A stretch of 64,000 nt of DNA from Penicillus capitatus (lineage: Eukaryota; Plantae; Chlorophyta). This document shows positions 11,150-64,000 of this stretch, piece by piece. Made by a program: the position numbers and the translations under genes. The notes under the pieces were generated by a model that worked only from the letters and a program-made list of their open reading frames with translations, had not been told where the DNA came from and did not search any database. Position 1 is the first letter of the stretch; the number at the start of each line of letters is the position of its first letter. The stretch spans positions 310,001-374,000 of the forward strand of contig OZ287695.1 of the NCBI GenBank assembly GCA_965649825.1. Reading direction: 5' to 3'.

Positions 11150-13420
11150 TTATCCTTCGGGAGACAGCAACTTTTCGAGAGCTGCCTTCGTTGCTTCGTC
11201 GCAGCTCGCCTGTTCACTTTGGCAACAGATTTCTGCAGGCGACTTCCCGTCTGTGTTCTTCGCCGTTTTGTCAACTCCGATTTCGACGAAAACCTGAAAA
11301 TCCGTCGACTCTCGCGTCTGATTCTTTGAGCGATGCTTTTTACTTCGGCCGAAGAAAGGTCTCCGCGATAGGCAGCCCAGTGCAACGGTGTGTTCCCTTC
11401 ACTGTCGGCCGTATTCGGATCTGCCGCGTTCTCGACAAGGACCTGAACACAGATCACGTTCCTATCTGTCTCGAGAAGCTGCAGCGAAGTTGACCTTGAC
11501 GGCATCGACGTTCCCTGTTGCGGAAGCCAGGTTTAGTGCCGTCCTGCCATCGTCGCTCAACAGATTGACGTCAGCACCGTAGTCCAGCAAAGCCTACGCA
11601 GCGACAGCGAAGTATTGAAGGACGGCGAAAGAGAGTCGAAGACAGTATTCAATTCGCATCAACTGCTTCCCACCTTCAAACACTTGAGCGCGTTCAGTGC
11701 CACTGCCCAGTGAAGCAGCGATGAGTGTTTGGACAGAAGAATGTCCGAGTCTTCATCCACCTGATCGACAATGGTGTTTACGGAAAAGCCATCTTCCAGA
11801 AGACGTCTGGCCTTCTCATCATCGTCTTCTTCGATGGCTTCGATCATTTCCTGTTTGTACAGAATCGAGACAATTTAGCTGTTGACTGCTTGATCTCACC
11901 TCACGTGTTCCTTCGAGTATGACAGCCTAAAGACACGAGAGAAGCGTCACAATACGAACAGCAATGGAGAGACTCGGCGTCCGTGGCAGACTTGAGAAAA
12001 GACAGCGTGAATCGATAAAACGAGTCCGATTCGGATGAAGGCGACGTCGAAAACGAGAAGATCAGATCCAATGAGAGACGTAGCCCAATGGAATGTGGAA
12101 TGTATAACTCACATGCGGTGTCTTCTTCGGCTCTGGTTTAGGTATCTTTATCTCTATTTTTCCTTGAATTCTGTCTATTACCCAGCTCCAGAAGAATGTT
12201 ATGTTTATATACACTGCCGGCAGTTCGGCGTTGCAGTTCTCCGGCCCGAAGGACGTGATACCAACCAGACTGTCCAGCTCGGGATCTCCGTCGGCAACAG
12301 AACCCAGAGGCGTGTCTGCCAATAGCAGCGGTCCTCCTGAGTCACCTGAAGAAACACACTTCTGATGGATGAAGATCCAGAAACGCATATCGCGGCGGTC
12401 GTGGTCTGCATCTTACCCTGACAGGTATCCATTTCGTAGAGACCTGCACAGATCATGTGATCTTTGATCGTAATGTCTTTGTCCCCGTCTGGTGACTCCC
12501 TCAACACCCGCTGGCAGTCATTCCTTGGGAGGTAGATCAGTTTATCTGCATAACGTAGAACGGAAGAAGGCTTTCCCTCTTCCGTGATTCCCCATCCTGC
12601 CGCTGTGAGATAGATCCCACGTGAAACACCGATGCTCTTCTCAGCGACCAAAGGACGTTTGAACTTGGCCTTCTTATTGAGCTTTATCAAACCGACGTCA
12701 AACCCATCCATTGTGTTTCCTGTCCAATAGTGATGTTTGATCACCTTCTTCGCTATAAACAGCTAACGACACAGAAGCAATTCTGTCAATGTCACCCAAT
12801 TCGGTCTTCGTCTGTACTTACGTTATCGCCATCACAAGCAGTACGCTTGTGAATCCCACAGCAGACAGCGTTGCCGCCGTCTGTTTTGATATCTTTATCC
12901 AAACAGTGAGCTGCCGTCAAAACCCATTTCGATCGAATGAGTGTCCCGCCGCACATGTGCTTTCTGTCTCCACGAGTGCGTATGCTACACATGTAAGGGA
13001 ACCTTTTCGTAGGAGCCTTGTGTCCTCCCTATCACCACATATTTCTGAAAAGCTTCGTTTTGGAACGCAATTGCAGACCACAATGTACGCTGTCATCTTA
13101 TTGTCAGCAGACTCCACTCGGTCAAGCTCGAGTCTGTCGAGCACGTCAGGAAGGAGGGAATTCAGAAAGCGTGTTTCGGGCTCCTGTGCAACAGGCCGAG
13201 CATGAAGGATCGGCATTTCAGACTCGGCGGCGGCGGAATATACCCGAACGTCTTGGTGCGGACGACCGTCCGAAGTATTGCGCCAGACCGCATCTAGGAT
13301 ACACAGCGCATCCGCCGTCTTCGAAAAGTTCACCGATGTAATGGCCTTACTCCAACTGCCGGTGCACGTGCGCGCTGTCAGGAAAAGCGTAAGCAGCGCG
13401 GTAAACCATGCGCATCTCAT
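11150..13420 (-). CDS. Trypsin-ankyrin fusion protein C (signal peptide, long pro-region, S1 protease, ~4 ANK units)
   Basis: MRCAWFTALLTLFLTA signal-like start; IV|GG split by an intron; TAAHC, GFDVGLIKL, DTCQ|GDSGGP. A 27-bp phase-0 linker exon (AVILEGTRE) leads into EMIEAIEE...; 99-bp ANK exons at 11593-11495 and 11442-11344; TAA at 11152-11150. Confidence 0.75.
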
Positions 13421-23352: not shown

Positions 23353-23425
23353 ACGGTCTGTTGTAACGATGGACGGACGACGGACGGCGTGACGATCCGT
23401 CGTGGAATCGTTCTTGGAATCGTCG

Positions 23426-34600: not shown

Positions 34601-34784
34601 GCGCAAAGTGCGCAAGGAGAACGGACAGAAGTACATTCCGATGTGGTTCAATCTGCGACGGCCGGACATCAAAGACCTCTCAAGGATCATGGATCACGAT
34701 CAGACATCTGTATGGAAATTTCGCGACGAGTACTGGAAAAGAAAAGAGAAGCGCAATTGGGGAGGCTGCCCAGATATTTACTAA
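31635..34784 (+). CDS. Oxysterol-binding protein-related protein (PH + OSBP domain)
   Basis: PH domain SGYLWIW...WHRNHF...GLWINSI; OSBP motifs DLSRITMPATINEPLSALQR, KPFNPLLGETFE, EQVSHHPP, DSRFRTD; single 1049-aa ORF, exact start uncertain. Confidence 0.93.
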   Translation: MDDGSCISVIEALSAFIGLSFCALAPWDKCLCRMSVSTPRMSGNRKERKAHKSRIWKFPAGLSVKKPLEGATDDEELARSFPKTTAADFLYNDSEDDANSSATVEKSGKSFPGSHLSPSQRGNSFSAARRKHAQFANDGYPPSGYLWIWMGVLRRWHRNHFLLETPGVLTHSRRRGSQMRGAFCLRDARVVSSQGHSRQFCIISPAGVAYLRAMTKDQRGLWINSIRTSIEKYTQCVEQAESIRASVGTTFMAVEPEEARLENEERERVHERMSELLPHQAVLKWQMNQLTRKMDVVGGGGGCEASSDGNYCSMGRRASTENRAMRRLSTQTRGGCGLEALDEKRMVRHASLTSELSLPSVKSNLHERLPRRVVAVQSSVSADDSAVSTKSSVHVKEMRDRAAARKCQTPRPEGAVRRRMTRRSPRRRASPREVDENGKRECVTPRLSIDATIAPPSPPRSRDLASLNESGMWKSYQNFIEAVQRIVQKEVRSTMELEIENAALRQLLEMRRSETPVAHHHSLHATSGSTSRSYSTAESEFDAALLEHSEDETLEKKEIRPRGGPPPPPPEDTNSHNNRELIDALEVVRRAEYVTRNSSNSEGLVVSLQSVIPPKDSEDDFDEESSNLDHEVYPPSLYSSAEFFVKEGNDMYALEPRNRLPAPRPIQRGFSLWSILKNAIGRDLSRITMPATINEPLSALQRFAEEFEHASFLTSAALSSDPHERLLYVTAFALSSYHGALLRDSKPFNPLLGETFEWSNNQLRFLGEQVSHHPPVSCFHVQGFDTEEHEKQLYHVQGELELKSKFWGTTLNVFPAGRIELFLETTQERYVWNKASISIHNLVLGQLWLDFHGEIQIKNVTTGDTAKIRLTKARGFGMDRGNLEGKVFNAQKEEVYVVDGNFTKSIYARPSAQSHRYEIFRAAEPPPDAGEQYNMTPFAVALNDLRGAEPGELPRTDSRFRTDIRALEVGEFSRATSEKLRLEEKQRQTRKVRKENGQKYIPMWFNLRRPDIKDLSRIMDHDQTSVWKFRDEYWKRKEKRNWGGCPDIY

Positions 34785-39030: not shown

Positions 39031-39723
39031 GAAGCACAGAAGAAGAGGTCTGGCTAAGGTGTTCTGATCTCTTAACTGCCTTCTGCTCAGACTCGAAGAC
39101 GGCGGCGTTAGGCAGAGCCCTGGTGTTCCTATCACTTTTCGCTTTCATCTCTATGTCAGTGAAAAGATGAAGTGGACGGGGTTTGCCTGAGCTTGCATGC
39201 TACCTGCTGGTGCAATATCTTTATCAAACATCGGAGAGATGACGGTGTTTTCCATGTCTCCATCGACAGTCCACATACATCTACGAGATTGCCTCAGAGA
39301 CTCGACAGGAGGTCGTTGAAGGTCTGGCTGGTATCATGTCAGTCACTGCTTACCTGAAGTTGCGTGCAGGATGATGAACGACTTGAATGGGTATCTGAAC
39401 AACAACTGCGTTTCTGTCCGGCTCTCCGTTACAGAGAATGAGGAACTGAGCAAGTCATCTTCGTGGTCAGAATGATTGCACTGTGATGCAGCAGCAAGTT
39501 CTCTCTTCTGGCAATCTGAGAGCTGTAACCAGGAATGGAGTTGATCTCAGACAGGGTCATTCTGTCAAATCAATCACCGTCAATTGTATTTGACGTCAAT
39601 CAGAACATCCGAACCATCTTCTCGACTGCGAACTTTTCTGCGAACTTTGTGAAGCGGCAAGCAGTTCTGCCAGTTCCGTCGAACCAGAAACGAAGACGTT
39701 CGTTGTGCGCGCTATTTCCCAAC

Positions 39724-42700: not shown

Positions 42701-45700
42701 GCGAGTTCTCGAGGCAATCCTCGAAGAGACGGACGAAGAAGACTTGGAAGATGTTCTGGACGACGAACGCGCAATTAAACTCGTCGAGAGTGCTCGCCAT
42801 CTGCTCGAGTGCACAGTGGACGATATTTTAATCCGTGAAATACTAGTGAAGGAGTTTCGACAATTGTCTCGCGTGTTAGAGAAATTTCCTCAAATTCTTG
42901 ATGATACAGTCAATAAAGTAAAGAAGCTGCTCGCATACTCGAAGAAATTGACATGGATGGAAATGACAAAAACTACGGAAGCCTTGATGTTTGCAAGACA
43001 CTCTTCAAAGCACAGCAGTGAAATACAAAAGTTCCTCGTTCAAAAAATAAGAGAGCCAGAGGGTTGGTGCAGTATGAGGGAGTGCATAAGAAGATTAAGT
43101 TTTATCGCAGAACAAATGCCTCAACTAGTGGTCGACCATCTTACGACGCTGGCGAGGGCGTACGCCGACGGCGACGAAGACGTGCGTCAGGCGGCGATAG
43201 AGGCCATCGACCGCGTCGTCGCGGCAACGCCGCAGCACGCTGGGAAGCATTTTTTGATGCTGTCGAGAATGTGTGTCTACAATGACTGGCGCGTGCGTCG
43301 GGCGGCGTTCAAGGCCATCGATCGCGCCGTCGCGGCGGCGACAAGTCCCGCCGTCCAGTATCTGTCAACGCTGGCAAGGGGGTGCGCCGACGAAGACGAA
43401 GACGTGCGAAGTGTGGCTATGAAAGCCATTAGCCGTGTCGTCGCGGCAGCGCCGCAGAACGCCGGCCAGCATCTCTCGTCGCTGGCGATGGGAGGCTCCG
43501 ATAAGGACTGGCGAGTGCGTCGGGCGGCTTTGGAAGTCATCGGCCGCGTGATTGTGGAGGAGCCGCTGCACGCGGGCAAGCATCTGGTGACGCTGGTAAG
43601 TGCGTGCGCCGACGGCGACTGGCAAGTGCGTCGTGCGTCTTTGGATGTCATCGGCCGCGTCGTCACGGTAACGCCGCTTCACGTTGTCGAGCATCTGGCG
43701 ACGTTGGAGAGAGCGTGCGCCGACGGCGACGTAAATGTGCGTCAGGCGGCTTTGGAGGCCATCCGCCGCGTTGTTGCGGCGGCGCCGCAGCACGCTGGCA
43801 AGCATCTTTCGTCGCTAGCGAGGGGAGGCGCCGACGAAGACTGGCGCGTCCGTCAGTTGGCGATGGAGGCCATAGGAGGCGTCGTCGCGGCGGAGCCCAA
43901 GTACGCTGCCGAGCATCTCTCGACGCTGACGAGGGGAAGCGTCGACGAAGTCTGGCCCGTCCGGTTGGCGGCGTTGGAAGCCATCGGCCGCGTGGTTGTG
44001 GAGGAGCCGCTGCACGTGTGCGAACATCTGGCGACGCTGGCGAGGGGGTGCACGGACGAAGACTGGCACGTGCGACAGGCAGCGTTGGAGGCCATCGGCC
44101 GCGTGGTTACGAAGGAGCCGCTGCACGCGGGCGAACATCTGGCGACGCTGGCGAGTGGGTGCGCAGAGGAAGACTGGCGCGTTCGTCGTGCGTCGTTGGA
44201 GGTCATCGGCCGAGTCATTGCGGCTGCGCCACAGCACGCCGGCGAACATCTGTCGACGCTGGCGAGGGGGTGTGCCGACGAAGATAGGCGCGTGTGTCGT
44301 GTATCGTTAGAAGCTATTGACGGCGTCGTTGCGAAGGAGCCGCGGTACGCGGGCAAGCACCTTTCGACGCTGGCGCGTGGGTGCGACGACGAGGACTGGC
44401 GCGTGCGTCGTGTATCAGTGGAAATCATCGGCCGCGTTGTTGCAGCGATGCCGGAGCACGTGTGCGAACATCTGGCGACGCTGGCGAGGGGGTGCACGGA
44501 CGAAGACTGGCACGTGCGACAGGCAGCGTTGGAGGCCATCGACTGCGTGGTTACGAAGGAGCCGCGACACGGCGGCGAGCATCTTTTGATGCTGTCGAGA
44601 GCGTGTGTCGACAAAGACTGCCGCGTGCGTCGGGCGGCTTTGGAAGTTATCGGCCACATCGTCACAGCGGCGCCTCAGAATGCCGGCGAGCATCTGGCGA
44701 CGCTGGCGAGAGCGTGTGTCGACGAAAACAGGCGCGTCCGTCGGGCGGCGTTCGATACCATTGACCTCGCCGTCGCGGCGGCGACAAGTCCCGCCGTCCA
44801 GTATCTGTCAACGCTGGCAAGGGGGTGCGCCGACGAAGACGAAGACGTGCGAAGTGTGGCTATGAAAGCCATTGGCCGTGTCGTTGCGGCAGCGCCGCAG
44901 AACGCCGGCCAGCATCTCTCGTCGCTGGCGAAGGGAGGTGCCGACAAAAACTGGCGCGTGCGTCGTGCGTCGTTGGCGGTCATCGGCCGCGTCGTTGCGG
45001 CGACGCCGCAGCACGCTGGCAAGCATCTTTCGTCGCTGGCGAGGGGAGGCGCCGACGAAGACTGGCGCGTGCGTCGGGCGGCTTTGGATGCCATCGGCCG
45101 CGTTGTTGTGGCAGCGCCACAAAACGCCGGCGAGTATCTGTTGGCGCTGGTAAGGGGGTGCACCGACGACGAGGTAGACGTGCGTCAGGCGGCTCTGGAG
45201 GCCATCGGCTGCGTCATCGCGGCGGCGCCCGAGCACGCTGGCAAGCATTTTTCGTCGCTGGCGAGGGGAGGCGCCGACGAAGACTGGCGCGTGCGTCGGG
45301 CGGCTTTGGAGGCCATCGGCCGTGTCGTTATGGCGGCGCCTCAGCACGCCGGCAAGCTTCTGTTGACGCTGGCGAGGGGGTGTGCCGACGAAGACTGGCG
45401 CGTGCGTCGTGCGGCTATAAAGGCTACCAGCCGCATCGTTACGGCGGCGCCTCAGCACGCCGGCAAGCATCTGTTGACGCTGGCGAGGGGGTGTGCCGAC
45501 GAAGACTGGCGCGTGCGTCGTGCGGCTATAAAGGCTACCAGCCGCATCGTTACGGCGGCGCCTCAGCACGCCGGCAAGCATCTTTCGTCGCTGACGAGGG
45601 GGTGTGCCGACGAAAACGAAGTCGTGCGTCAGGTGGCAATGAAGGCTTTCGCCCGCGTTGTTGCTGTGGCGCCGCAGTACGTCCGCATGATTATGTCGCC

Positions 45701-46247
45701 GTTGACAAAGGGGTGTGTCGACGAAAACGAAGTCGTGCGTCGGGAGGCGATGAAGGCTATCGACCGCGTCGTAGCGGATACGCCGCAGCTCGCCGGCGAG
45801 CTGCTACCGTCCCTGGCGACGGGGTGCGGCTACGAAGACGTGCGTCGGGAGGCGATAGAGGTTATCGACCGCGTTGTCGCGGCGGCACATTGGCACGCTT
45901 GCGAGTTTCTGTCGACGCTAGCGAAAGGGTGCGCCGACGAAGATGAAGACGTTCGTGACGCTGCAAGAACTTCATTAAAAAACGTAAAACTAAAAGAAAC
46001 TATCTCTTCAGCAATATCGTTTCCGTCCGCTAATAAGGGAGGGTTATTATTATTCTTCGTGCAAAACGCATTCACATTAGGTCCTCTTACGAAATTTAAA
46101 CCAGTCCCTCTTTTGTTGCATACATCCTTTTCACAAGAGATTGGAAAATGGAAGAAGGAAGCGATTGATGTGTTCGTTGGGTATTTGAGACAAGAATGCG
46201 ATGAGGAGTTTCCCGGACTTCTAGAGAACATTTGCATCGGAGAATAG
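39724..46247 (+). CDS. NLR-like STAND protein 2: unknown N-terminal domain + NACHT + ~26 HEAT repeats (~2157 aa, exons 39724-41235, 41286-46247)
   Basis: GNPGSGKT (41589-41612), LLVVDGLDE, FPHLTFQEYFAG; phase-0 intron 41236-41285 at the same position as in paralog 1. An in-frame upstream ATG at 39535 is also possible. Confidence 0.9.
43140..45985 (+). repeat. 111-bp (37-aa) HEAT repeat array, 25 full + 1 partial unit
   Basis: Counted in ORF 41286..46247; units at 45360-45470 and 45471-45581 are nucleotide-identical. Confidence 0.92.
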
Positions 46248-51426: not shown

Positions 51427-54150
51427 ATGGTGCACCTGGCATTACACTTGTGGCTGCTCCTCCTGTCGGGGCCAATTCACGGCAGCCAAGAAATGGGTAA
51501 GCATTGTTCGCATTCGGCGTTTATGTTGCGCGTTTCTAGGACAAGGATGGGAGGAGGCGTCCAACGCCGTCGTCTACGAAAAAATAGTGGTGCGTTCCAC
51601 GACACGGAAGAACCTCGACCGCCATTGTCTGAGACACGTGTTCACAGGGAGGCGTAAAGGCAAAGCGCGGAAGATTTCCATACATGTGCAGCTTGCGTCG
51701 ACGTGGCAGCCATTCGCACGCATGCGGGGCGACGCTGTTCCAGGCGCAATGGATTTTGACGGCGGCTCACTGCGTGGACCCTGACAAAGACAAGACCCTT
51801 GGTCTGTTTCCCGTCGTCTACTGCGGAATCTACGACCTGAAAGAAAAAGTGGATGAGGACAAGGTGAAGATTCGATACTTTTCTGCAGAAGGGTCACACA
51901 AACGCTGTGTGCTAAGTAGGTGTTTGATGTCATTGACGCCCACCTGCATGACGATTGGACTGGTGATGTTATCAACGGATCTGACATTGCCGTGCTGAAG
52001 CTCGACAGAGAGGCCAATCTTTCACTGCCGCGTTTGGCTTCGAGCGACGTTCCTTTGAAAGCCGGAGATCTGTTGGCTGCGACGGGATGGGGACAGGCAG
52101 AATCTGCACATCATTCACACGTTCTGCGCTTGGCCGACAGAATTGCCGTTGTCGGGCAGAAATACTGCGACGTGCAACCTCAGGGGGCCGACAAGGACAG
52201 CTGGATATGCGCCGGAGCGCTAGGACAGGACACATGTCGAGGTCAGTGTCCGGGCATTGGACGTTATCGATCCGAGAATGATTACGTCTGTGCGTTTGGC
52301 CGGTAGGTGATTCGGGCGGTCCTCTGATCTTGGCAGATGCTCCAGATGGCCACATCACTGACGGGAAAGCACAAAGAGACATGATCGTCGGCATCACGTC
52401 TTACGGCTACGCAGAAGACGAGTCTCAACTGTGTTCCGGCTTCGAGCCTGCCGTTTACACACGCGTCCACCATTTTTTGGATTGGATAGAAGACATCATC
52501 CAGAGCGATCGCACGAAAAAGGTGTGATCTGGAGCAAACATATCCACTGACTGCCGTATATGGAATACATGTAGCGTCGAAGTCGCAAGAAAAGTGGCAC
52601 GAAGAGTTTGGACAAAAAACGCATGCAGTATGCGAGGCTGTCTCACTCAGAGATGCTCGCCGTAAGCTCTCATTAGTCTATGAGAATCGAGTACATTCCG
52701 TCGTCGTAGGAGATGGTCATTGCTATTCGAGGGGACAGCGCTCTCGATGCAGAAGCACTTCTTTTGGCCGGTCTGTATGTTGACACGACCTATGGACATG
52801 ACATCAGCACGCCGGGATATAAAGTAGCAGAGGGATCGACGCCCCTGCACTTGGCAGCCGCATTCGACGCTTCGAAATGCGCAAAGGTGCGACGACGAAT
52901 CCGCGCATCAGAAGGAGATTGCCCAGAACGCCTTTTTTGCATCTTATGCATCCAAATGTCTCTCTGTGTCTTCAGGTATTGCTAAAGTACAAAGCAGACA
53001 CCGATGTCGAGAACGCCGAAGGAGAGACGCCGCTTCACAAGGCATCCTACCACGGACACACTGACATCGTAAAGGTGCGCCGCCATTGCGAATTTTATGT
53101 CGCGGAAGAGAGATATCGAAGGTTCTCATCGCAGCTGGAGCTGACGTCAGTGCCTACAACAAAGTCGGCAGGTCTGCTCTCTACATGGCATCGTACCAAG
53201 GACATCTCGAAGTTGTTAAAGTGGGTCGATAGAAAGGAAAATCTGCTCTTCTTGAAGAGATACTTAAGGTGTTGATAAAAGCCGGCGCTACTGTGGATGC
53301 AACGACACCTTCCGGTTGGACTCCCTTGCATACAGCATCAAAGAACGATCACACCGATGTCGTTAAGGTCGGTGGTCCTTATGGCGAATGCCCGACCTCT
53401 CCGACAAAAGACTGAAGGTGCTGATTGAAGCCGGCGCCGATGTGGACGCTAAGACGAATACCGGCTGGACAATTCTTTATGTGGCATCTCGTCTTGGACA
53501 TTCAGAAGTTGTCAAAGTAGGGCCTTACAGTAGAGAAAGTACTTCGCCTGCCTGAATACCGTCGATCGCAGCTGTTGATTAAAGCCGACGCTACTGTTGA
53601 TGCAGCGACGCATTCCGGTTGGACTCCTCTGCATACTGCATCCAAGAACGACCACACCGATGTCGTGAAGGTCAGTCCATATGGCGAATGCTCGGCCTCT
53701 CCGACGAAGGACACTGAAGGTGCTGATTGAAGCCGACGCCGATGTGGACGCTAAGACGAATACCGGCTGGACGGCGCTTTATGTGGCATCTCGTTATGGA
53801 CACTCGGAAGTGGTCAAAGTAGGATTGTACAGTGAAAGTACTTCGCCTGCCTGAATACCGTCGATCGCAGCTGTTGGTTGAAGCCGGCGCCACTGTGGAC
53901 GCAACGACGCATTCCGGTTGGACTCCCTTGCATACTGCATCCAAGAACGGCCATCTGAACGTTGCTAAAGTAAGTCAGAACGCCTCTCTGCCGAAAAGAC
54001 GACGCTTTCCAGGTCCTCGTTGGTGCTGGAGCGTCGAAGTTAAGCTTGACTACAGATGGAAAAACTCCTCTCGAATGCGTTTGTACCGACGCGAACGCTC
54101 AGTGTTCTGAAAAGACTCGGACGGATCTCATTAAGCTGCTGACGCCATGA
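51427..54150 (+). CDS. Trypsin-ankyrin fusion protein A (signal peptide, S1 protease, linker, N-cap + 7 single-exon ANK repeats + C-cap)
   Basis: MVHLALHLWLLLLS; EKIV|GG; TAAHC, SDIAVLKL, DTCR|GDSGGP. Phase-0 introns 52522-52574 and 52662-52709 flank an 87-bp linker exon. 99-bp ANK exons start at 52976, 53122, 53269, 53418, 53572, 53720 and 53871; TGA at 54148-54150. Confidence 0.82.
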
Positions 54151-54370
54151 AGAAGATGCCTGTCAGCAGCGTCCTTTTTTCCTGTCCGCTGTCAACCACA
54201 TCACACAGTGTGATGTGACGTTGACAGCAACATAAAACCCTGTTATAAACAACTATGGACAAGGAGTTTGCGGAAGTACGCCTAAGCACGTTTCTAGAAT
54301 GCTTTGTTGGCGGTCTGCCTTAGTCAACTACGTTGTAACTGACGTTATTCGCTGACAGATTAAGATCGTA

Positions 54371-54722
54371 GACAGCATACGACTGTCCCATCGTAGCAAC
54401 GACAGCATACGACTGTCCCATCGTAGCAACGACAGCATACGACTGTCCCATCGTAGCAACGACAGCATACGACTGTCCCATCGTAGCAACGACAGCATAC
54501 GACTGTCCCATCGTAGCAACGACAGCATACGACTGTCCCATCGTAGCAACGACAGCATACGACTGTCCCATCGTAGCAACGACAGCATACGACTGTCCCA
54601 TCGTAGCAACGACAGCATACGACTGTCCCATCGTAGCAACGACAGCATACGACTGTCCCATCGTAGCAACGACAGCATACGACTGTCCCATCGTAGCAAC
54701 GACAGCATACGACTGTCCCATC
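54371..54722. repeat. Perfect 30-bp minisatellite (GACAGCATACGACTGTCCCATCGTAGCAAC), 11 full + 1 partial copy
   Basis: Read directly; no spacers between units. Confidence 0.95.
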
Positions 54723-54946
54723 TTAACGAGAGAGAACTCAGGGCTTTCAAAGGATCTGTAAAGACGGCTCGGTACAGAACCTAATCGCATTCGGGCGTGC
54801 TTCTCTGGTAGCGAGATGAACGGCGAGACGCAGTCGAAAGGGTGATTCCGTTTAACGTCGGAATGATCGCAATCGATCCGGTACAACAGATGACTCGGGA
54901 CTGGTTGACTGTTTTTCGCATCTGAACGCCATTCTCGTTGGAGAAG

Positions 54947-57848
54947 ATGTTCACGCTTCGTCGGTCTTCCGCGCCAACACTCCGCTCGAAAAAATGGCTC
55001 TTTGCGCTGACGAATTTGACGCTGCACTCGTTGTTGCTGACGTCGTGGACAGCATCCGCCAGTCAAGGTGAAAAACGGAAACGCCCGCATTCGTACGACG
55101 TTCTCTTCTGCAAAGGTTTGGACGCCACGGACTTGAGCTCTGAGTCGAACACAGAAATCGTACCTAAAATAGTAGTAAGCGGCACGAAGCCTCTGTCGCG
55201 GAATGCCAAGTCAATGCTTGGCAGAAAGGGGAAACCGCACCGCCTGAAAGATTTCCATATACGTGCAGCTTAAGGGAACGTGGCAGCCGCAGACACATGT
55301 GCGGCGCGACGCTCTTTAGACGCGACTGGGTCATGACGGCGGCTCACTGCGTGGACCCTAACGACCACGAAACCATTGGCCTGTCGCCCATCGTCTACTG
55401 CGGAATACACGACCGCAGGAAGGCGGAAGACGACCAGGTAGGTAGCTTCGAATTCCTCTCGGATAGAGCAAAGCGCGCTGTGTCGGCGCAGGTCTTTGAT
55501 GCAATCGCAGGATACGTTCACCCCAAATGGACAGGCAGCGTCGCACATGGACATGACGTCGCCGTATTGAAGCTTGACGGAGACGCCAACCTGACACTGC
55601 CTCGTTTGGGTTCGGGACATATTTTCTTGAACAAAGGAGACTATCTTGCTGCCACGGGATGGGGACTGAACGAAGACGGCCGTCCAGCAAATAAGCTGCA
55701 AGTGGCGACGCATCTCGCCGTAGTCGGGCAAGATAAATGCAAGGAAATTCCCCAAGGCGTCGACTCCAACAGTTGGATCTGCGCTGGAGGACTGCAGGAG
55801 GACACCTGCAGAGGTCATCTGGGCTGTCATCTGCTGTACCTTCTGATGACGAGCAGCATCTGCGTTGTTTGGCAGGTGACTCTGGCGGTCCACTGATGCT
55901 GATGGACTCTCCTGATGGAAAAATGGAAGATGGAAAGCCACATCTGGACATGATCGTCGGCATCACGTCATTCGGCTATAGAGTAGACGGCGCTGACGAG
56001 TGTTCTGGAGACGAGCCTGCCATCTACACGAGGGTCGACTATTTCCTCGATTGGATTGAACGGACCGTCAACTGTCATCAAAATGTGAGATCCGAAAGTC
56101 ACTCTTGGTCTTTAGCACATGTACGCAGCGTTCGAGATGCGTTGCGACGCACCAGGTTATGCTAAACGAGAGGCGAAAACACTATGCATTGTTCTCGGAA
56201 TCGGCCATGATCGAGGTAAACTGCATGGAAGTCGGACAGTGGACAGTTCTTCGTGCAGGCGATGCTCGATGCCATGCGAAAGGATAACTCCCTTGACGCT
56301 GAGGCTCTTATGTTGGCCGGTCTCCATGTCAACGCCACCTACGGACAGGAAGATATAGAGTCACTTCCGAAGTCGGATCGCTCGACTCTGCTGCACGCAG
56401 CTGCCGCGCTCAACGCCGAGCAGTGTGCTCAGGTAGAGCCAGACTCCTCTGTAGAGTCACATACGCAGAATGACGGACCTCAACTCCTCACATTCCTTGT
56501 GATTGACTGTACTCTGTAGGTGTTAATGAACTATGGCGCAGGAATTAACACAGCGAGTGCCAACGGCAACACACCTCTGCACGAAGCTGCGACCTTCAAC
56601 AGTGCTCGCGTCGCAGAAGTCGGCGATGCCTCTTCTGAATTCCTAGTAACTGGCTGCATTCTGTAGGTGTTGATGATGTATGATGCGGGAATTGACGTAA
56701 CGAGTGCTAATGGCCATACACCTCTGCACGAAGCTGCGATCTCCAATAGTGCTCGAGTCGCGAAAGTTGGCGATGCTTTTCGCATGTCTCCTATTGCCGG
56801 TCGTGCAAGCAGATTCTCCTCGATCGTGGGGCAGATCCCGACACCCCTGACAACGACAACTGGACACCGCTTCACCAGGCAACATACAAGAATCACGTCA
56901 ACATTGTAAAGGTAAATCCGACGCTTTTGTCGCGTCTCGTGCTGAAGAGGTTCTGAAAGTATCTCGTCGACTATGACGCGGACCTCGACAGTTTCAGGAA
57001 TGACGACGGCCTTGCTCCGCTTCACAATGCAGTTGCAAATGGATTCATACAGATTACGAAGGTCTGTGAGCCTCGTCTTCGCTCGGTTATGTGTTCAAAA
57101 TCCATTGGTCCAAGATTCTCGTCAAAGGAGGGGCGGATGTTGATGCTTTCAACAACCATGGCTGGACAGCACTGCACGTAGCAGCCGAAAAAGAATACAC
57201 GGAGATTGTAAAGGTCAGAATTCCGCCTTTGATCCGATCTCTTTTAAAGACGATGGAAGGCAGACTCTAGTTGACGCTGGGGCAGACGTCGAGGTTTTTA
57301 ACCAACGCAGTTGGACACCACTACACGCAGCTACAAACCATGACTGTGTACAGTCTGCGAAGGTCAGAATCACGCCTTTGTTTTTAGAGCATTCAAAAAA
57401 CGAGATACAGATCCTTGTTGAAGCTGGCGCAAACATCAACACTGTCGGTGAGGGTGGTTGGACTCCATTGCTCTTATCTGTCATTCATGACCGCATAGAG
57501 ATGCAAAAAGTAAGCTACGCTTGTATCGGGTTGCCGTGTCGATAGAGACGTTTGAAGATTCTCCTCGACCACGGTGCAGATACTGAAGCAATGCTTTCAG
57601 ACAACTTTTGGACTCCACTTCACATGGCAGCTCATTATGGCAAATTGCAAAGTGCTAAGGTAAGCCACCGATTGCGTTAACTGCCTCATACCTATAGGAA
57701 GTATGGGCAGATGCTCGTAGAAGCTGGAGCAAACAAAAATATCGCAGCCAAGGATAACAGAATTCCATTCAATCATTACTGTGAACACAGTAAAGCAAAG
57801 TGCTCGGATAAAACTAAAGCAGCTTTCGCTCAACTCTTGCGTGTTTGA
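54947..57848 (+). CDS. Trypsin-ankyrin fusion protein B (S1 protease, linker, N-cap + 8 single-exon ANK repeats + C-cap)
   Basis: Hydrophobic N-terminal stretch; PKIV|KG; TAAHC, HDVAVLKL, DTCR|GDSGGP. The 87-bp phase-0 linker exon is at 56129-56215; 99/102-bp ANK exons start at 56520, 56667, 56813 and onward; TGA at 57846-57848. Confidence 0.8.
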
Positions 57849-59839
57849 ATCCTTACATCTCTTTGGTCTTTCTGCAGCAACGAATTCTGACGTTATGTGT
57901 TGTTCTTGTGCTGACTAAGACTCGCTGCAACGTAATTGCTAGGTCTGATCGTCGCCGCCATTACATTTACCGCGAATTCAAACAGCCATTTAATCGCGAA
58001 GGAACAACGCTGCCATTCTGAAAGTGTCGGTTTCGTAAGCAACGCGCAGTTCCGTAAGGGCGATGCCGAATAAGAAAGGCGCTTGCGTTCCTGGCTGGAG
58101 CTTTTGCATCGAACGCGGTTGTCGAATCGGTTATTTACACCGTCGTCAATTGCGAGCGAAATAATAGCGTCAAAAGAACACGGACGGTTCTTATGACCAA
58201 CGCTATCTTCGTCACCGAGCGATACTCAATCTAACGGGACAGTACTGGAAAGAGTTGGATGGACAGATCCAGCGACAATGAATCTGAACGCCGAAAGGAG
58301 GTCTTCTATCAGATCTTCGACCAGCTCTTGAAGAAGTCGAGGATTCCGTTCTCGACATCGTATCTGAAAACAACATTCTGAGACGACGAAAGACAAATGC
58401 GTTGTTTTCTGTGACTATGAAGATCTCTGGAATCCAGGACGACGCTCCGCAGGTGATTGATGGGCAAGTTGTAAACGGATCTGTTCGCGCGTGAGCTTGA
58501 ACGTCCTCGCCTGCTCCTACGTGTCAACCCGAATACCAAAAACGCTTCAGGTCAGTCAGTGAATGCGTGTCTCTACGACCACGACCCGTTTCATTGGCAG
58601 AGCGACAAAGCGAAAGAGGTAGTCAGAGACAGACAGCGGCACCTTTTCGCGTTTCGGCGAAATGAGAGAAATGCCTGACTGTGTTCATCTTCGAAGTGTT
58701 CGGTTTGATCATTCACAAATGATCGGTAAGTTGAACGTAGCCAAGGCGAGTGCGGACAGACCAGTTTTGCATCCATAAAAAGAATGCTGCTGGGCGATAG
58801 GTTCGTCCTCCTGTAGTCAGCGATCGTCGTTTATTCGACCATTGTTGTCCAAGTGGACGAATGTGACAGAGCGTTCAGCTGCACGTACTATCCGTGTGCT
58901 GCCCGTACAACTTGGAGGAATGATTCTATTCGTGTGTGGCTTGCTGCAGTTTGGGACAAGGCGATATCCTCTTTCGAGAACTGCCCCATCGGAAAACGGA
59001 TCGTCCATTCCGATCATTAAAGAGTGATGGGATCTTCTGCGTTAGTCCCTTGCTCCAGATGCCGTTGCTGGCCACAGTGTTTGGAGAGATGAGTGCAAAG
59101 ATCATCTGACTTCTGGATCGCTGATAACCAACACATAGTCGCACTCTCGCAAACGTGAAGCGCATGAGCAGAGATGCAACATTCAGAATGCACAGTTGCC
59201 GTGTTTTGATTGCTCATAGTGGATGGATGGATTTACCTGTCTTTGCCAAATCGCCGTCGCCGTTATTGAGAAGCTGTTCTGTCCAGCGTCTTTGCTGTGA
59301 CCCTTAACGACGACCATCAGAGTTCTCGCTCGATGCCACCCACGATCCGTAGTTGTTCATGCATCACTATGAGATGAACGAACCATATCTGTTGTAAAAG
59401 CAGAATCCGTTTCTTATTCAATGCCAACAGCTGTTCAGTCCCGAGAGACATGCTTGCGTTAGAGCACAGGGCTCAAGAACACACACTGTTCTTCGTGGCA
59501 CTTAGACAACCGCTTGACAGTCGCTCTGACCGCGCCGAGAAGATGCATCAAATCAAACACGATCATGTGAGCTAGATGTTGATAAGACAGACCGTACAAC
59601 GCATCGTGTCGCATCTGCTGAAGTTTTCTGCGTACTTTGTTCCTCGAAGGCAAGTCGATTTGAACGTTTCGCGAGAGGGTGACTTCATGCTGTGCGTGCA
59701 GGTCATATATCGATATGCAAGCTGAAGGTCCGGATGGAGGACTCAGTGAAGTCGAAATGCTCGCCTAGGGAATAGGAAGCCGACCTATTATCGGGCAGTC
59801 GAACGTCGGACAACGTTATGACCCGAGACGTAGCAGGTC

Positions 59840-62000
59840 GACAGACAGAGTCGAATGGACCGTGCTCCTCGGATGGTTACGCAAGCATGGCAGACAGAGC
59901 GAAATGTCGTAGACTCGAGTCCCCTCTCAAGTACTCGGAAATGACGAAGATCACGTTGCACTCCAAGCACGGTGACGAAGTTTTGGGGATTTATTCCAAG
60001 GCCTTTGCTCATGCCTTTGCCAAGGAAGGTTTTTCTAAACGAACGTGGCGATTGCCCTCTGCAGAACGCTTATGCATGTCAAACCCTCTTCGTATAGCGG
60101 CACTGCGAAGCTAGTAATGCTGACGAAGAAGCTTCTTGGCAACCTCTTGTCACAACCCAAGCTGACGAGGAACAACTTCGCGCAGTACGAAACGACCTTT
60201 CTGGCATTAAATCTATCCTTATTTCTGCTTCACATGTCTAGTCATAAAGACATTGATGAAAAAGAAAAACAAGATCTCCCTCTGTCTATCCATCCCGGTG
60301 AGGGAGTACGACTTAGCGCTGTCGTGCAAGATCTGATTGCTCTTGCGTCCATTGCAATGAAACAGGGGTTATGAAAGAATCTTATGATGGTATTCAAAGT
60401 TTGCAAGGATTAACATATGATATTGTAAAATGAAGCTCAGTTAAATGGTCTGGTTCACATGTACATCGTTACGAACTTCATTTATATGTTCGTAGGCGTT
60501 TCCGGTTACAGTGTGAGAACTTCATGCGCATCTTCACGTAAGTTCATTTCAGGTTCGACATGATTGCACAACGCCGTACGACACGAGAAGGATAGCAGTG
60601 CGCGTTGATATTCAAGTGCAATGTCTTGGATTCAACGACCAGCAGTTAGTAGATTATATATAAAGCGAACTAACCGAAGACGAATCTCCGAGACTCGTTG
60701 AATCCCTCAAAAACTCTCCCGCCATGTGGGAGATGGCCCACATTCCTGTGACGGCCCACGTCCTGTGTTCCTTGTCAAAGGACCACGGTACCGCAGCTGA
60801 AGGACAAGGGAAGAGAGCGAGCATCTTCCAAATATACAACGACATGGCAAACTACGTCTGGGCGCGATTCAAAAAGAAGCCTAAGGCGAGGAACATAAAA
60901 AGATGCGATTTTTTGGTGATTTGGAAAAAAAAATTGCCTTCGAAACTCTTCGGAGTGGTCTCATTCTTATCCCTTTAAGACTCGTTACTTAGTATGCGAC
61001 CTCTACAGACGCAGCAAGAACTTTTAGAGAAAGTGGACTCCTCTTGCTCGTGTTGGAAGGTCAAGAGTACCAATTCCCCCATCTGACATTTAAAGAGTAT
61101 TTCGCCGGCAGACACATTGCCAAGAAGTCGGGAAGAAAAAAGATCGGATGACGAAACTAAAGCGCCGGCTTTCATTCGCGAAGGAAAACAGAAGGAGAAG
61201 CATTTTCTAACAGCATCCTTTGCAATGCACGCATTCGCGGAAAGCCGTAGAAACTTCGCCTTAGACAAGATGCTTTCGATTGTGCAACGACGAACCCGTC
61301 GATGTTTTAGAAGTACAACGCTTTTTAAGAGTAGAAGTTCTTGAGGCAACTCCAGAAGAGGTAGATAAATCATGTCTCGAGATATTTATCGAAGATGAAA
61401 AGACCAGCGAAATTACCAATAGCACGCGAACTCCCAATAAGCACAATGGACGATATCCTGATTCGTCAAATAGTTGTTAGGAGATTTGGGCAATGCACTT
61501 GTGTGTTGCAAGAATTTCCTAGCGTATTTAATGATACCAATGATGAAACAAAACAAGCATTAGCAAATTCACGAATCTTGACATGGAAGGTACTGGATAG
61601 AATTGAGAATGCGCCAAAACTCGCAAAGCATTCTCTGGAACACATAAATGAGACAATCCAAATGCTCCTACAGCTAGTGAACAAAGTCAAAGATTGGTGC
61701 AACACGGAGGAGTGAATAAGAAGGTTTGGATGTGTGGCAAGTAAAGTGTCGAGTTCCTGGCGACCTTCTGCCTTCGCCGACAAGAGACTTCGACAACGAA
61801 GACACGTTAGGGCGTCAGAATGCGCTGGAAGGCATCCGACAGGTAATAGTGACAGTGCCGCAGCTGGCAGGTGACCTTCCGTCGATGCTAGTGAGAGACA
61901 GTGGCGACGGATATCCGTTGCTACGTGGCACAGCGATAGATCGTTTGCATGGTTCCTTCCTCGACTTAACGTCCACGCGTTGCGACGGTTCCGTTCAAAG
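59840..62000 (+). pseudogene. Degenerate third NLR-like NACHT-HEAT gene
   Basis: Colinear fragments: PLKYSEMTK...PKLTRNNFAQYETTFLAL (N domain), MWEMAHIPVTAHVLCSLSK, ESGLLLLVLEGQEYQFPHLTF, DDILIRQIV, and 1-2 decayed HEAT units. Stops and frameshifts present; the Walker A/B region is absent. Confidence 0.82.
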
Positions 62001-62767: not shown

Positions 62768-64000
62768 TCATGGCTTCAGCAGATCCTGGAGTTCTGTTTT
62801 AGTTTGTTCCGTACACACATCGACGTGTGTACAGATAACGTCGTACGGTTTCTTGCCGTCGTCATTTTCGATTGTCTTGAGTTTCGTTCCCATCGAAGTA
62901 TACACTAACGCCTACCGACACAGTTGTTATCGATCACGCCACCGAGTCAAGAACGCGGCTCACCTCGACCGACTCAATTTTTCCAAAGGATGCACCATAG
63001 TGCATCGCTGTGCTTCCCCCATTGTCCTTGGCGTCAACGATTGCACCGCTGTCCAGGAGAGTCTAAGGAAAACATCAATGCGGACTCTCCGAGTGCACGT
63101 CTTACTTCAATGATGTCTTCATTTCCTCGGGTTGTGGCATACATGAGAGGCGTCGTATCGTGTGGCGCCAGCCTATACTCAACATTGGCTCCACGTTTTA
63201 GCAGGAACTACAAAGTTCCACTGGATTAGAGAACGCAGAGGCTGTCACTGACAGACTTTGAGTGCTTTTCTGGAAATCTGATCTATTGCCTCGTAGAGAG
63301 CAGTTTCCCCAGCTCCATCCGGTTGGTCGATTTGCGCTCCGTTATCGAGAAGAAGCTTCGAACAGAGACAGATGGTCAGGGGAGGAGGACTGGCAGCAAC
63401 ACTGGCCTACTTCGACGATGTCCACATTATTGTTTCGTGTTGCTATGTGAAGGGCTGTATCTCCCGTCTGGGTTGGTTTCGTCGGATCGGCGCCGTTTTG
63501 CAGGAGAAACTGCACGTCACGTCTTCAATGACAACGAGTTGGCTCAGCTGTTTGGACTTACCTTCACAATGGCAGAGCTGTCGTCTTTGACGGCAACGTG
63601 AAGCACGTTCATTCCTCTGCGGTTCAAAGCAGATGTGTCCGCTCCTTTGTTGACGAGAACCTTCAAAGCACCCATTCATCAGAAGCATCGAAACAGATAC
63701 CGCCCTGACTTTGACAATCTCTGTGTATTCGTATTTGACTGCTGCATGAAGAGCAGTGTCAGCTGTTCTGTCGGCGATGTTGACATCTGCTCCGGCATCG
63801 ATGAATGCCTGCGGGCGAACAGCCTTCCGATAGGAAACTCAAGATAACAGTACAGGTATTACCTTTACAATCTCCAGATTGTTGTTCTCGACGGCAACGT
63901 GGATTGCTGACTTGTGATCGGCGTCAAAAGTGTCAACGTTGGCGTGGGCTGCAATGAGAATCTTCGAAGAGCAAGTGCATTAGAGCGAATGGCAGCTGAA
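62768..64000 (-). CDS. 3' part of an ankyrin-repeat gene with one repeat per exon (same family C-cap); 5' end outside the window
   Basis: Phase-0 exons of 99-102 bp, e.g. 63062-62964 TLLDSGAIVDAKDNGGSTAMHYGASFGKIESVE; last exon ...KKPYDVICTHVDVCTEQTKTELQDLLKP*. Confidence 0.8.

What the first reader, a model, noticed from the sequence alone, without database searches (positions are those of the whole stretch)
51427..57848. Trypsin-like protease and ankyrin array are one spliced gene, hidden from the ORF track
Seen: the protease ORFs end in a stop only if unspliced. A GT donor just before the stop (52522; 56085) leads through phase-0 introns to an open 87-bp exon of identical length in A (52575-52661) and B (56129-56215), then to the ANK N-cap exon (EMVIAIR / AMLDAMR). 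Copy C has the same layout with a 27-bp linker exon (EMIEAIE). All three retain His/Asp/Ser triad motifs, a DTC Asp in the S1 pocket (trypsin-like specificity) and a hydrophobic N-terminus. Established: ankyrin repeats are mostly intracellular binding modules, while S1 proteases with signal peptide and IVGG are secreted zymogens. Inference: a secreted protease with a variable ANK substrate-targeting arm. I do not recognise this architecture in algae.
Basis: partly seen in the sequence, partly recalled or inferred. Interest (0 to 1): 0.8.

Follow-up and report, generated by a model that had tools for sequence, protein, structure and literature searches.

The report
Green-algal trypsin protease fused to ankyrin repeats
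The trypsin-like protease and the ankyrin-repeat array are almost certainly one spliced gene, and the window holds three full copies and one partial copy of a little-studied protease family that is already listed, unnamed, in the gene catalogues of siphonous green algae (Bryopsis, Caulerpa, Ostreobium).

Summary
In copies A (51427-54150, +), B (54947-57848, +) and C (13420-11150, -), the last protease exon ends on a canonical GT donor. Phase-0 introns then lead, through a short linker exon (87, 87 and 27 nt), into an ankyrin (ANK) N-cap exon and an array with one repeat per exon.

The one-gene reading is well supported.
- Proteins with the same order (signal peptide, S1A trypsin domain, linker, ANK, C-terminal cap with two invariant cysteines) are predicted in Bryopsis, Caulerpa and Ostreobium.
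- Four ~2-2.7 kb contigs from sequencing-run or JGI assemblies encode them; the three inspected carry one unbroken reading frame.
- One of these contigs aligns to the Bryopsis genomic gene as nine blocks, as a spliced mRNA would.
- Four intron positions and phases are shared between Bryopsis and the window genes.
- The closest relative (a metagenome contig) has the same exon plan and a conserved linker exon.
- The predicted N-cap helix spans the last linker junction, so the Met in "EMVIAIR" is not a start codon.

Secretion and a substrate-targeting role for ANK are inferences only. The architecture is not new to databases, but I found no description of it in the open literature. I rate it a new member of a catalogued but unstudied family, of moderate interest.

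The parts
51427..54150 (+). Copy A, whole gene: 15 exons, 655 aa. Order: signal peptide, propeptide, S1A protease, basic linker, ANK N-cap, 7 internal repeats, C-cap.
   Evidence: Hand-built model, all introns GT-AG, no internal stop. Pfam Trypsin plus Ank.
51427..52521 (+). Copy A protease part: exons 51427-51496, 51540-51589, 51648-51863, 51920-52241 and 52307-52521. Introns fall after the signal peptide (phase 1), at IV|GG (phase 0), at DEDK|VFD (phase 0) and at DTCR-G|DSGGP (phase 1).
   Evidence: The same four intron positions and phases occur in Bryopsis BSKO_04377 and in L003.
52575..52661 (+). Copy A linker exon, 87 nt, phase 0, RRSRKKSGTKSLDKKRMQYARLSHSEMLA. Its 3' part encodes the start of the ANK N-cap helix.
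   Evidence: It is 65% identical to the 81-nt linker exon of L003, against 52-53% for the flanking introns and 51+-3% for shuffles. In the P0001 model the equivalent stretch is a helix.
52710..54150 (+). Copy A ANK array: the N-cap exon 52710-52886, seven 99-nt single-repeat exons, and the C-cap exon 54013-54150 carrying C..C and LL.
53270..53953 (+). Tandem duplication inside A's ANK array: a 299-bp unit (two ANK exons with their introns), 2.3 copies, 87% matches.
54947..57848 (+). Copy B, whole gene: 16 exons, 706 aa. The protease part is 54947-56084, the linker exon 56129-56215 (87 nt), the N-cap exon 56259-56432, followed by eight repeat exons and the C-cap exon 57711-57848. The activation motif is IVKG.
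   Evidence: A 147-bp tandem duplication (1.9 copies) lies at 56492-56776.
11150..13420 (-). Copy C, whole gene: 9 exons, 557 aa. It has a long (about 90 aa) pro-region. The protease part is 13420-12113, the candidate 27-nt linker exon 11926-11900, the N-cap exon 11850-11674, followed by two repeat exons and the C-cap exon 11293-11150.
   Evidence: Alternative linkers are listed.
62768..64000 (-). Copy D, partial: eight 99-102-nt ANK exons plus the family-type C-cap exon 62911-62768 (DDGKKPYDVICTHVDVCTEQTKTELQDLLKP*). The gene runs off the window end, so its 5' part was not seen.

Best explanation
Each of A, B and C is a single intron-rich nuclear gene of a green alga. By family membership the alga is probably a siphonous bryopsidalean or a close relative. 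Each gene encodes one polypeptide with these parts, in order:
- an N-terminal signal peptide;
- a short propeptide;
- an S1A chymotrypsin-fold protease;
- a flexible linker;
- an ankyrin-repeat domain that ends in a family-specific C-cap with two invariant cysteines.

Shown by sequence:
- the His/Asp/Ser triad and Gly193/Asp194;
- Asp189 in the S1 pocket, with Gly216 and Ala226;
- the three classical disulfide pairs;
- an activation-type N-terminus (K|IVGG in A, K|IVKG in B, Y|IVGG in C);
- a linker without any hydrophobic segment, so both domains lie on the same side of the membrane.

Inferred mechanism:
- The protein enters the secretory pathway as a zymogen.
- It is activated by cleavage before Ile16. 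In A and B this cleavage follows Lys, which matches the enzyme's own predicted Lys/Arg preference, so paralogues could activate themselves or each other.
- It cleaves after basic residues.
- The tethered ANK module binds a protein partner, which could be a substrate, an anchor or a regulator.
- The number of ANK repeats (2 to 8 or more internal repeats) changes through tandem duplication of single-repeat exons. This diversifies the binding arm among clustered paralogues.
For: Gene structure:
- In-frame GT-AG models were built for A, B and C.
- Pfam finds Trypsin plus Ank in each.

Same architecture in relatives:
- Caulerpa lentillifera: P0003, P0006, P0007, P0246.
- Bryopsis sp. KO-2023: P0004 and six more.
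- Ostreobium quekettii: P0010, P0011, P0121.

Transcript-level support in relatives:
- P0001, P0002 and P0008 are unbroken ORFs on contigs of 1952, 2044 and 2582 nt. The 2044-nt contig ends in sequencing adaptor.
- L005 aligns to the Bryopsis genomic gene in nine collinear blocks separated by gaps in the genome only.
- In Bryopsis the protease C-terminus and most of the linker lie in one exon, so no splice is needed at that junction.

Shared gene plan:
- Four intron positions and phases are shared between Bryopsis and the window genes.
- L003, the closest relative found (49% identity to copy A over the full length), has the same exon plan, 70/50/213/325/209/81/177/99 nt, and a conserved 'Y..LSH.EMLA' at the end of its linker exon. 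That exon is conserved above the intron background.

Protein-level features:
- The family alignment shows the invariant triad, six disulfide cysteines (four invariant, two in at least 90% of sequences) and two invariant C-cap cysteines.
- The AlphaFold2 model of P0001 has a confident protease domain, a disordered linker, and a helix at 334-353 (SDFMEKINHQLLREMVAALE) that starts 13 residues before the 'EM'. The Met is therefore internal to the N-cap.
- N-termini are hydrophobic in A, C, L003 and the relatives.
- The closest solved structures are secreted S1A enzymes: Der p 3, complement factor D and crayfish trypsin.
- Exon duplications lie inside the ANK arrays.
Against: - No RNA from the window organism was available, so the junctions in A, B and C are predicted, not observed.
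- For C, the 27-nt exon is one of several in-frame options.
- B's signal peptide is weak.
- ANK domains are rare in the secretory pathway.
- No localisation, activity or binding data exist.
- The AlphaFold2 model gives no confident contact between the domains (pTM 0.49), so it says nothing about how ANK and the protease cooperate.
- Some Ostreobium models have the trypsin domain only (P0272, P0274, P0278). These may be partial models, or they may be real protease-only members.
Confidence: 0.8

Rival explanations
1. There are two adjacent but separate genes per copy. A protease gene ends at the stop just inside the 'intron'. An ANK gene starts at the Met in the second codon of the N-cap exon (MVIAIR, MLDAMR, MIEAIE).
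For: A Met sits at position 2 of the N-cap exon in A, B, C and L003. An in-frame stop follows the protease exon if it is not spliced.
Against: - The gap would be only about 190 bp in A and B and about 260 bp in C, and it contains an open, conserved exon.
- Residues upstream of the Met (LSHSEMLA, LSHDEMLA, INHQLLRE) are conserved across the family, and the equivalent stretch of relative P0001 forms part of the predicted N-cap helix.
- Relatives carry the fusion in unbroken ORFs on transcript-like contigs, and in Bryopsis within a single exon.
- The top 120 hits of each of the two searches were not checked for a stand-alone ANK protein with this N-cap and Cys C-cap, and none was noticed.
Confidence: 0.05
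2. The gene is one gene, but it makes both isoforms. Retention of the intron after the protease exon would give a protease-only product, and splicing would give protease-ANK. The short distance from donor to stop (1 to 26 codons) makes retention a simple switch.
For: A stop codon lies 1, 26 and 16 codons into the retained intron in A, B and C. Trypsin-only family members are annotated in Ostreobium.
Against: A stop soon after a donor is expected by chance in any intron. There are no expression data. The trypsin-only models are flagged partial or may be mis-predicted.
Confidence: 0.15
3. The ANK domain is not a substrate-targeting arm. It could instead be an intramolecular regulator or inhibitor, or an anchoring or sorting module that holds the zymogen at a membrane, wall or vesicle partner. 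It might be released by self-cleavage in the Lys/Arg-rich linker of A and L003.
For: The linker of A (KKRRSRKKSGTKSLDKKR) and of L003 is full of trypsin-type cleavage sites. The linker is disordered in the model. In many proteins ANK serves as a scaffold rather than a substrate selector (general knowledge).
Against: The basic linker is not conserved. It is acidic and Pro-rich in P0001 and P0002 and in the Ostreobium members. No predicted contact between the domains was found.
Confidence: 0.3
4. The copies are decaying or silent duplicates (pseudogenes) in a repeat-rich gene cluster.
For: The region carries tandem paralogues, a minisatellite and a degenerate NLR-like copy.
Against: All 40 exons of A, B and C are open, with canonical splice sites. 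The catalytic, disulfide and cap residues are intact. The paralogues are only 38-45% identical yet keep every functional motif, which indicates purifying selection.
Confidence: 0.05

Closest known systems
Uncharacterised Trypsin-ANK proteins of Bryopsidales, for example Bryopsis sp. KO-2023 BSKO_04377, BSKO_04688 and BSKO_04805, Caulerpa lentillifera g5190, g5115 and g8885, and Ostreobium quekettii CAD7694929
   Same: - Same domain order.
- Same C-terminal cap with two invariant Cys and LL.
- Same N-cap helix.
- Four shared intron positions and phases in the protease part.
- Introns at ANK repeat boundaries.
- Several copies per genome.
   Different: - Only 29-39% identical to the window copies.
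- Linkers differ in length and charge.
- Position 226 is Gly in these proteins and Ala in the window copies.
- Bryopsis has no intron at the protease/linker boundary.
- None has a studied function.
Secreted S1A zymogens of animals (trypsin, the mite allergen Der p 3, complement factor D, plasma kallikrein, coagulation factor XI)
   Same: - Best matches among solved structures.
- Triad, oxyanion hole, Asp189 and Asp194.
- An N-terminus of the Ile16 type.
- Three conserved disulfides.
- A signal peptide followed by a propeptide.
   Different: - The animal mosaic proteases carry their binding modules (CUB, EGF, kringle, apple, CLIP, LDLa) N-terminal to the catalytic domain. Here the module is C-terminal and is an ANK array.
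- The window family has an extra 220-loop insertion and a probable extra Cys pair (PYMC/VYCG).
HtrA/DegP proteases (S1C protease with C-terminal PDZ domains)
   Same: The design logic is similar: a chymotrypsin-fold protease followed by a C-terminal protein-binding module that recruits substrates or regulates activity. This comparison is from general knowledge and is an analogy only.
   Different: - A different subfamily.
- No zymogen-type N-terminus.
- PDZ rather than ANK.
- Oligomeric cages.
- No PDZ match in the window proteins.
Animal gene models that combine ANK and trypsin (the fly model P0052, Aphelenchoides P0243, Tigriopus californicus TCAL_01394 P0292)
   Same: Both Pfam families occur in one predicted protein. 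P0052 also starts with a signal-peptide-like sequence.
   Different: - In P0052, ANK is N-terminal to the protease.
- P0052 lacks the algal C-cap; the sequences of P0243 and P0292 were not inspected.
- These are unverified predictions and are probably independent fusions.

Membership tests
S1A chymotrypsin/trypsin peptidases (Pfam PF00089) | A full-length match to the Trypsin profile above the curated cut-off. | tested here: met
   140.4, 131.7 and 144.6 bits against a cut-off of 20.6, covering profile positions 1-220.
S1A chymotrypsin/trypsin peptidases (Pfam PF00089) | The catalytic triad His57/Asp102/Ser195, with the Gly193 oxyanion hole and Asp194. | tested here: met
   TAAHC, D(I/V)(A/G)(V/L) and GDSGGP are present in A, B and C. 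H81, D134 and S222 (A numbering) are invariant across 12 family members.
S1A chymotrypsin/trypsin peptidases (Pfam PF00089) | The conserved disulfides 42-58, 168-182 and 191-220. | tested here: met
   C66, C82, C195 and C209 are invariant. C218 and C262 are present in at least 90% of sequences.
S1A chymotrypsin/trypsin peptidases (Pfam PF00089) | A zymogen activation site that exposes an Ile16-Val-Gly-Gly N-terminus. | tested here: met
   A has EK|IVGG, C has AY|IVGG, B has PK|IVKG and L003 has QK|IVEG. The spacing to PYxCSL is 8 residues, as in trypsin. The cleavage itself could not be tested.
S1A chymotrypsin/trypsin peptidases (Pfam PF00089) | Trypsin-like (Lys/Arg) specificity: Asp189, Gly216 and Gly226. 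| tested here: inconclusive
   Asp189 (DTC) and Gly216 are present. Position 226 is Ala in A, B, C and L003. From memory, the G226A change in trypsin shifts preference towards Lys and lowers activity. An enzyme assay is needed.
Ankyrin-repeat domain (PF00023/PF12796) | Tandem 33-residue repeats that match the Ank profiles, with capping repeats. | tested here: met
   Ank_2 scores are 271, 200 and 124 bits. The exons are 99 nt, one per repeat. The ANK part of relative P0001 folds with pLDDT above 90.
Bryopsidalean Trypsin-ANK family (uncharacterised) | The order signal peptide, Trypsin, linker, ANK, ending in a C-cap with two invariant Cys and LL. | tested here: met
   The alignment of A, B, C, L003 and eight database members has C634 and C641 invariant. 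Copy D carries the same cap.
Bryopsidalean Trypsin-ANK family (uncharacterised) | Shared intron positions and phases. | tested here: met
   The shared introns fall after the signal peptide (phase 1), at (I/V)(V/A)|GG (phase 0), before V(F/L) (phase 0) and at DTCx-G|DSGGP (phase 1). They occur in the window genes, in L003 and in BSKO_04377.
Bryopsidalean Trypsin-ANK family (uncharacterised) | Both domains on one mRNA. | tested here: inconclusive
   This holds for relatives: there are unbroken ORFs on L001, L002 and L005, and L005 aligns to the Bryopsis gene as spliced blocks. No transcript data exist for the window organism.
Classical secreted protein | A cleavable N-terminal signal peptide and no other membrane segment. 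| tested here: inconclusive
   The hydrophobic core scores 2.0-3.4 (Kyte-Doolittle, 10 residues) in A, C, L003 and the relatives, and only 1.4 in B. By inspection of the sequences, small residues occupy -1 and -3 and the linker has no hydrophobic stretch. No SignalP-type predictor and no experiment were available.
HtrA/DegP (S1C plus PDZ) | PDZ domain(s) C-terminal to a Trypsin_2-type protease. | tested here: not met
   There is no PDZ match, and the best protease profile is PF00089 rather than PF13365. The resemblance is functional only.

The most novel reading that the evidence does not exclude
The clustered, fast-diversifying signal-peptide, trypsin-zymogen, ANK paralogues could form a self- and cross-activating proteolytic cascade in giant single-celled (coenocytic) green algae. 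It would be a clotting-like or immune-like system that fires when compartments are breached by wounding or attack. Each ANK arm would direct a protease to a different target. In this genome the system might work alongside the neighbouring NACHT-HEAT (NLR-like) genes.
Probability: 0.1. Interest if true: 0.8.

Novelty: new member of a known kind. Interest (0 to 1): 0.45.

Why it matters
As far as I recall, animal-type S1A zymogen proteases are scarce in the green lineage. Here they form a multi-copy family restricted, among named genomes, to siphonous green algae, and each member is fused to a protein-binding ANK array that appears to travel through the secretory pathway.

Siphonous green algae are giant single cells that survive wounding by rapid plug formation and protoplast regeneration. 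A family of tethered, activatable proteases is therefore an obvious but untested candidate for wound or defence proteolysis.

There is also a practical point. ORF-style gene calling splits these genes: P0005 in the metagenome relative is a protease-only call that reads through introns. Annotation of such genomes needs splice-aware models.

Tried and rejected
I modelled the transcript-supported relative P0001 instead.
- Literature searches found nothing relevant. I combined trypsin, serine protease or peptidase S1 with ankyrin and with Bryopsis, Caulerpa, Ostreobium, Bryopsidales, wound plug or algae. Two preprints were checked by text search. They mention only rhomboid proteases or generic peptidase duplications.
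- Searching the sample accessions (SRR6256312, SRR28002515, 3300008031, ERZ25074695) in papers found nothing, so the source organisms of those contigs remain unnamed.
- The attempt to name the window organism through its oxysterol-binding protein gave only 'green alga'. The best named hits were Apatococcus at 48% and Chlamydomonas at 44%, and unnamed environmental hits reached 72-76%.
- A general link between NACHT genes and Trypsin-ANK genes is not supported. The window and L003 show them as neighbours, but three Bryopsis loci do not.
- The linker exon is no better conserved than the introns between A and B (0.55 against 0.55 and 0.60). The conservation signal comes from the A-L003 pair and from the protein-level motif.
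- A separate ANK gene starting at the N-cap Met was considered and rejected, as set out under the rival explanations.

Full report
**What is in the sequence**

The window is eukaryotic, with short GT-AG introns. The bacterial-style ORF list therefore breaks the genes into pieces. I read the three regions and assembled exon chains by hand and by script.

- Copy A (51427-54150, +) has 15 exons and gives 655 aa.
- Copy B (54947-57848, +) has 16 exons and gives 706 aa.
- Copy C (13420-11150, -) has 9 exons and gives 557 aa.

All 37 introns are GT-AG. Thirty-six are 43-89 nt long and one, in C, is 186 nt. The local consensus is AAG|GTNAG...YAG|GT.

- In A the last protease exon ends at 52521, followed by GTGTGA, so an unspliced reading stops at once. 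The next exon is 52575-52661 (87 nt), then 52710-52886 (EMVIAIR...).
- In B the protease ends at 56084. The next exon is 56129-56215 (87 nt), then 56259-56432 (AMLDAMR...). Unspliced, the frame runs 26 codons further to a TAA.
- In C the protease ends at 12113. A 27-nt exon (11926-11900) with good splice sites precedes the N-cap exon 11850-11674 (EMIEAIE...). Direct joining and a few other paths are also in frame, so C's linker is not settled.

Pfam finds a full-length Trypsin domain and strong Ank matches in each spliced product.

**Is it one gene?**

The main rival is a protease gene followed by an ANK gene that starts at the Met in the second codon of the N-cap exon. Several independent results argue against it.

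1. A homology search with the fused A protein returned proteins with the same two domains in the same order. They come from Bryopsis sp. KO-2023, Ostreobium quekettii and (EukProt) Caulerpa lentillifera, plus unnamed contigs. A profile search added six more Bryopsis members, another Caulerpa member and more contigs.

2. Four of the unnamed proteins sit on contigs of 1952, 2044, 2582 and 2705 nt, and the three I inspected (L001, L002, L005) carry one unbroken ORF. L002 ends in Illumina adaptor. Genomic members of this family are intron-rich, so these contigs behave as transcripts.

3. L005 aligns to the Bryopsis genomic gene BSKO_04377 (L004) in nine collinear blocks at 71-95% identity. The blocks are separated by gaps in the genome only. 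That is the signature of a spliced mRNA from a related Bryopsis, and it covers both domains.

4. Threading P0004 onto L004 gave the Bryopsis exon map.
   - Its introns fall after the signal peptide (phase 1), at YVA|GG (phase 0), before VLTTVG (phase 0) and at DTCN-G|DSGGP (phase 1).
   - These match the window genes in position and phase.
   - In Bryopsis the protease C-terminus and most of the linker lie in one exon, so there the fusion does not depend on any splice prediction.

5. The closest relative I could find is a 462-kb ENA metagenome contig (L003). A prokaryote-style call (P0005) there had read through introns.
   - My model of that gene has the same exon plan: 70/50/213/325/209/81/177/99... 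nt, with one GC-AG intron.
   - Its 81-nt linker exon ends ...KRRKEYGYLSHDEMLA, against ...KKRMQYARLSHSEMLA in A.
   - Nucleotide identity between A and L003 is 0.65 in the linker exon. It is 0.52 and 0.53 in the flanking introns, and 0.51+-0.03 for shuffles.
   - The A-B comparison shows no such contrast.

6. The residues just upstream of the Met are conserved across the family. In an AlphaFold2 model of the transcript-supported relative P0001, one helix (334-353, SDFMEKINHQLLREMVAALE) starts 13 residues before the 'EM'. In the window genes, intron 6 therefore splits the N-cap helix, and the Met is an internal residue.

I conclude that the one-gene reading is very likely right for A and B, and right in outline for C. 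It remains a prediction for this organism, because no RNA data from it were available.

**What the protein looks like**

The protease is a standard S1A enzyme.
- It has the triad motifs, Gly193 and Asp194.
- It has the three classical disulfide pairs.
- It has an activation-type N-terminus with trypsin-like spacing to the PYxCSL strand.
- The best solved matches are secreted S1A enzymes: Der p 3, complement factor D and crayfish trypsin.

The S1 pocket has Asp189 and Gly216. Position 226 is Ala in A, B, C and L003, but Gly in the database relatives. From memory of the classical trypsin mutants, this should favour Lys over Arg and lower activity. It needs an assay.

Two further cysteines (PYMC and VYCG) are present or absent together across the family. 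This suggests a fourth disulfide.

The N-termini of A, C, L003 and most relatives look like signal peptides. B's N-terminus is weak.

The linker is basic in A, B and L003, and acidic or Pro-rich in other members. It is disordered in the model (pLDDT below 50) and has no hydrophobic stretch. Both domains must therefore be on the same side of the membrane.

The ANK domain has an N-cap, 2 (C), 7 (A) or 8 (B) internal repeats, and a C-cap with two invariant cysteines followed by a ...LL tail.

Repeat number changes by tandem duplication of single-repeat exons. A has a 299-bp two-exon unit in 2.3 copies at 87% matches. B has a 147-bp unit in 1.9 copies.

**How it probably works**

The following steps are inferred, not shown.
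- The protein enters the secretory pathway.
- It is stored or exported as a zymogen.
- It is activated by cleavage before Ile16. In A and B this follows Lys, which matches the enzyme's own predicted specificity, so self- or cross-activation among paralogues is possible.
- It cleaves after basic residues.
- The tethered ANK module binds a partner.

Whether that partner is a substrate, an anchor or a regulator cannot be decided here. The model gives no confident inter-domain geometry (pTM 0.49).

The Lys/Arg-rich linker of A and L003 could be a self-cleavage site that releases ANK, but this feature is not conserved.

**Context**

The window organism is a green alga. Its oxysterol-binding protein matches Apatococcus and Chlamydomonas best among named taxa, and unnamed environmental sequences at 72-76%. 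Among named genomes the family occurs only in Bryopsidales, so a bryopsidalean or related ulvophyte is likely but not proven.

The window carries a fourth, partial copy (D, minus strand, 62768 to the window end) with the same C-cap. It also carries two large NACHT-HEAT (NLR-like) genes and a degenerate third. L003 also has a NACHT ORF nearby. Three Bryopsis loci do not, so I treat the neighbourhood as an observation, not as part of the mechanism.

**Novelty**

The architecture is already present in public protein sets, labelled 'hypothetical protein' or 'Peptidase S1 domain-containing protein'. A few animal gene models also combine ANK and trypsin; in the one inspected (P0052) ANK comes first.

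I found no paper that describes or discusses the algal family. The search covers open-access text only.

The window genes are therefore new members of a catalogued but unstudied family. The family itself is an unusual variant of the mosaic serine proteases, because its binding module is C-terminal, is an ANK array, and appears to be in the secretory pathway.

**Verdict**

- The gene-structure interpretation is supported.
- The functional interpretation is plausible but untested.
- Interest is moderate (0.45).

Noticed in passing
window 62768-64000 (-): There is a fourth, partial family member (copy D). It has eight single-repeat ANK exons and a last exon, 62911-62768, ending DDGKKPYDVICTHVDVCTEQTKTELQDLLKP*, which is the family C-cap. 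Its 5' part, presumably the protease, lies beyond the window end.
   Followed up: partly
window 2443-8010 (-) and 39535-46247 (+): There are two large, nearly intron-free NLR-like genes. Each has an unknown N-terminal domain of about 520-580 aa, then NACHT, then a long HEAT-repeat array. The two are 64-67% identical to each other. The N-terminal ORF and the NACHT ORF abut or overlap by a few bases.
   Followed up: partly
window 59697-61796 (+): Fragments 29-45% identical to the NLR-like genes are spread over different frames. This is either a degenerate or pseudogenised third copy, or a copy interrupted by introns.
   Followed up: partly
window 54371-54722: A perfect 30-bp minisatellite (11.7 copies, 100% matches) lies in the roughly 800-bp spacer between copies A and B. 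On the minus strand it reads through as an artefactual ORF (MGQSYAVVAT repeats).
   Followed up: no
L003 10379 (donor of intron 3): The closest relative's gene uses one GC-AG intron (GACAAG|GCGAGT) where the window copies have GT.
   Followed up: no
L003 1593-3062 (-): A NACHT-domain ORF lies about 7 kb from the Trypsin-ANK gene of the metagenome relative, echoing the window. Three Bryopsis loci (L004, L006, L007) have no NACHT neighbour.
   Followed up: partly
family alignment A1 (A residues C54 and C99): The cysteines in PYMCSL and VVYCG are present together (A, B, C, L003, P0001, P0002, P0007) or absent together (P0004, P0008-P0011). This suggests an extra, family-specific disulfide.
   Followed up: no
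L002 1-190: The gene call for P0002 starts too late. An upstream in-frame ATG gives MTNKLLPALFLILLLGPS..., a signal-peptide-like start. The contig ends in Illumina adaptor sequence.
   Followed up: partly
proteins P0052, P0243, P0292/P0333: Animal gene models also combine ANK repeats and a trypsin domain: a fly, the nematode Aphelenchoides bicaudatus and the copepod Tigriopus californicus. In P0052 the ANK repeats come first and the protein starts with a signal-peptide-like sequence. They may be independent fusions or merged gene models.
   Followed up: no
window 14075-18011, 23402-25824, 31635-34784: Other genes in the window are a 3-beta-HSD/epimerase-like gene (+), a TLC-type ATP/ADP transporter (-), an EF-hand ferric-reductase/NADPH-oxidase-like gene (+), and an oxysterol-binding protein encoded as a single 1049-aa ORF (+). 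Intron-poor and intron-rich genes sit side by side.
   Followed up: partly
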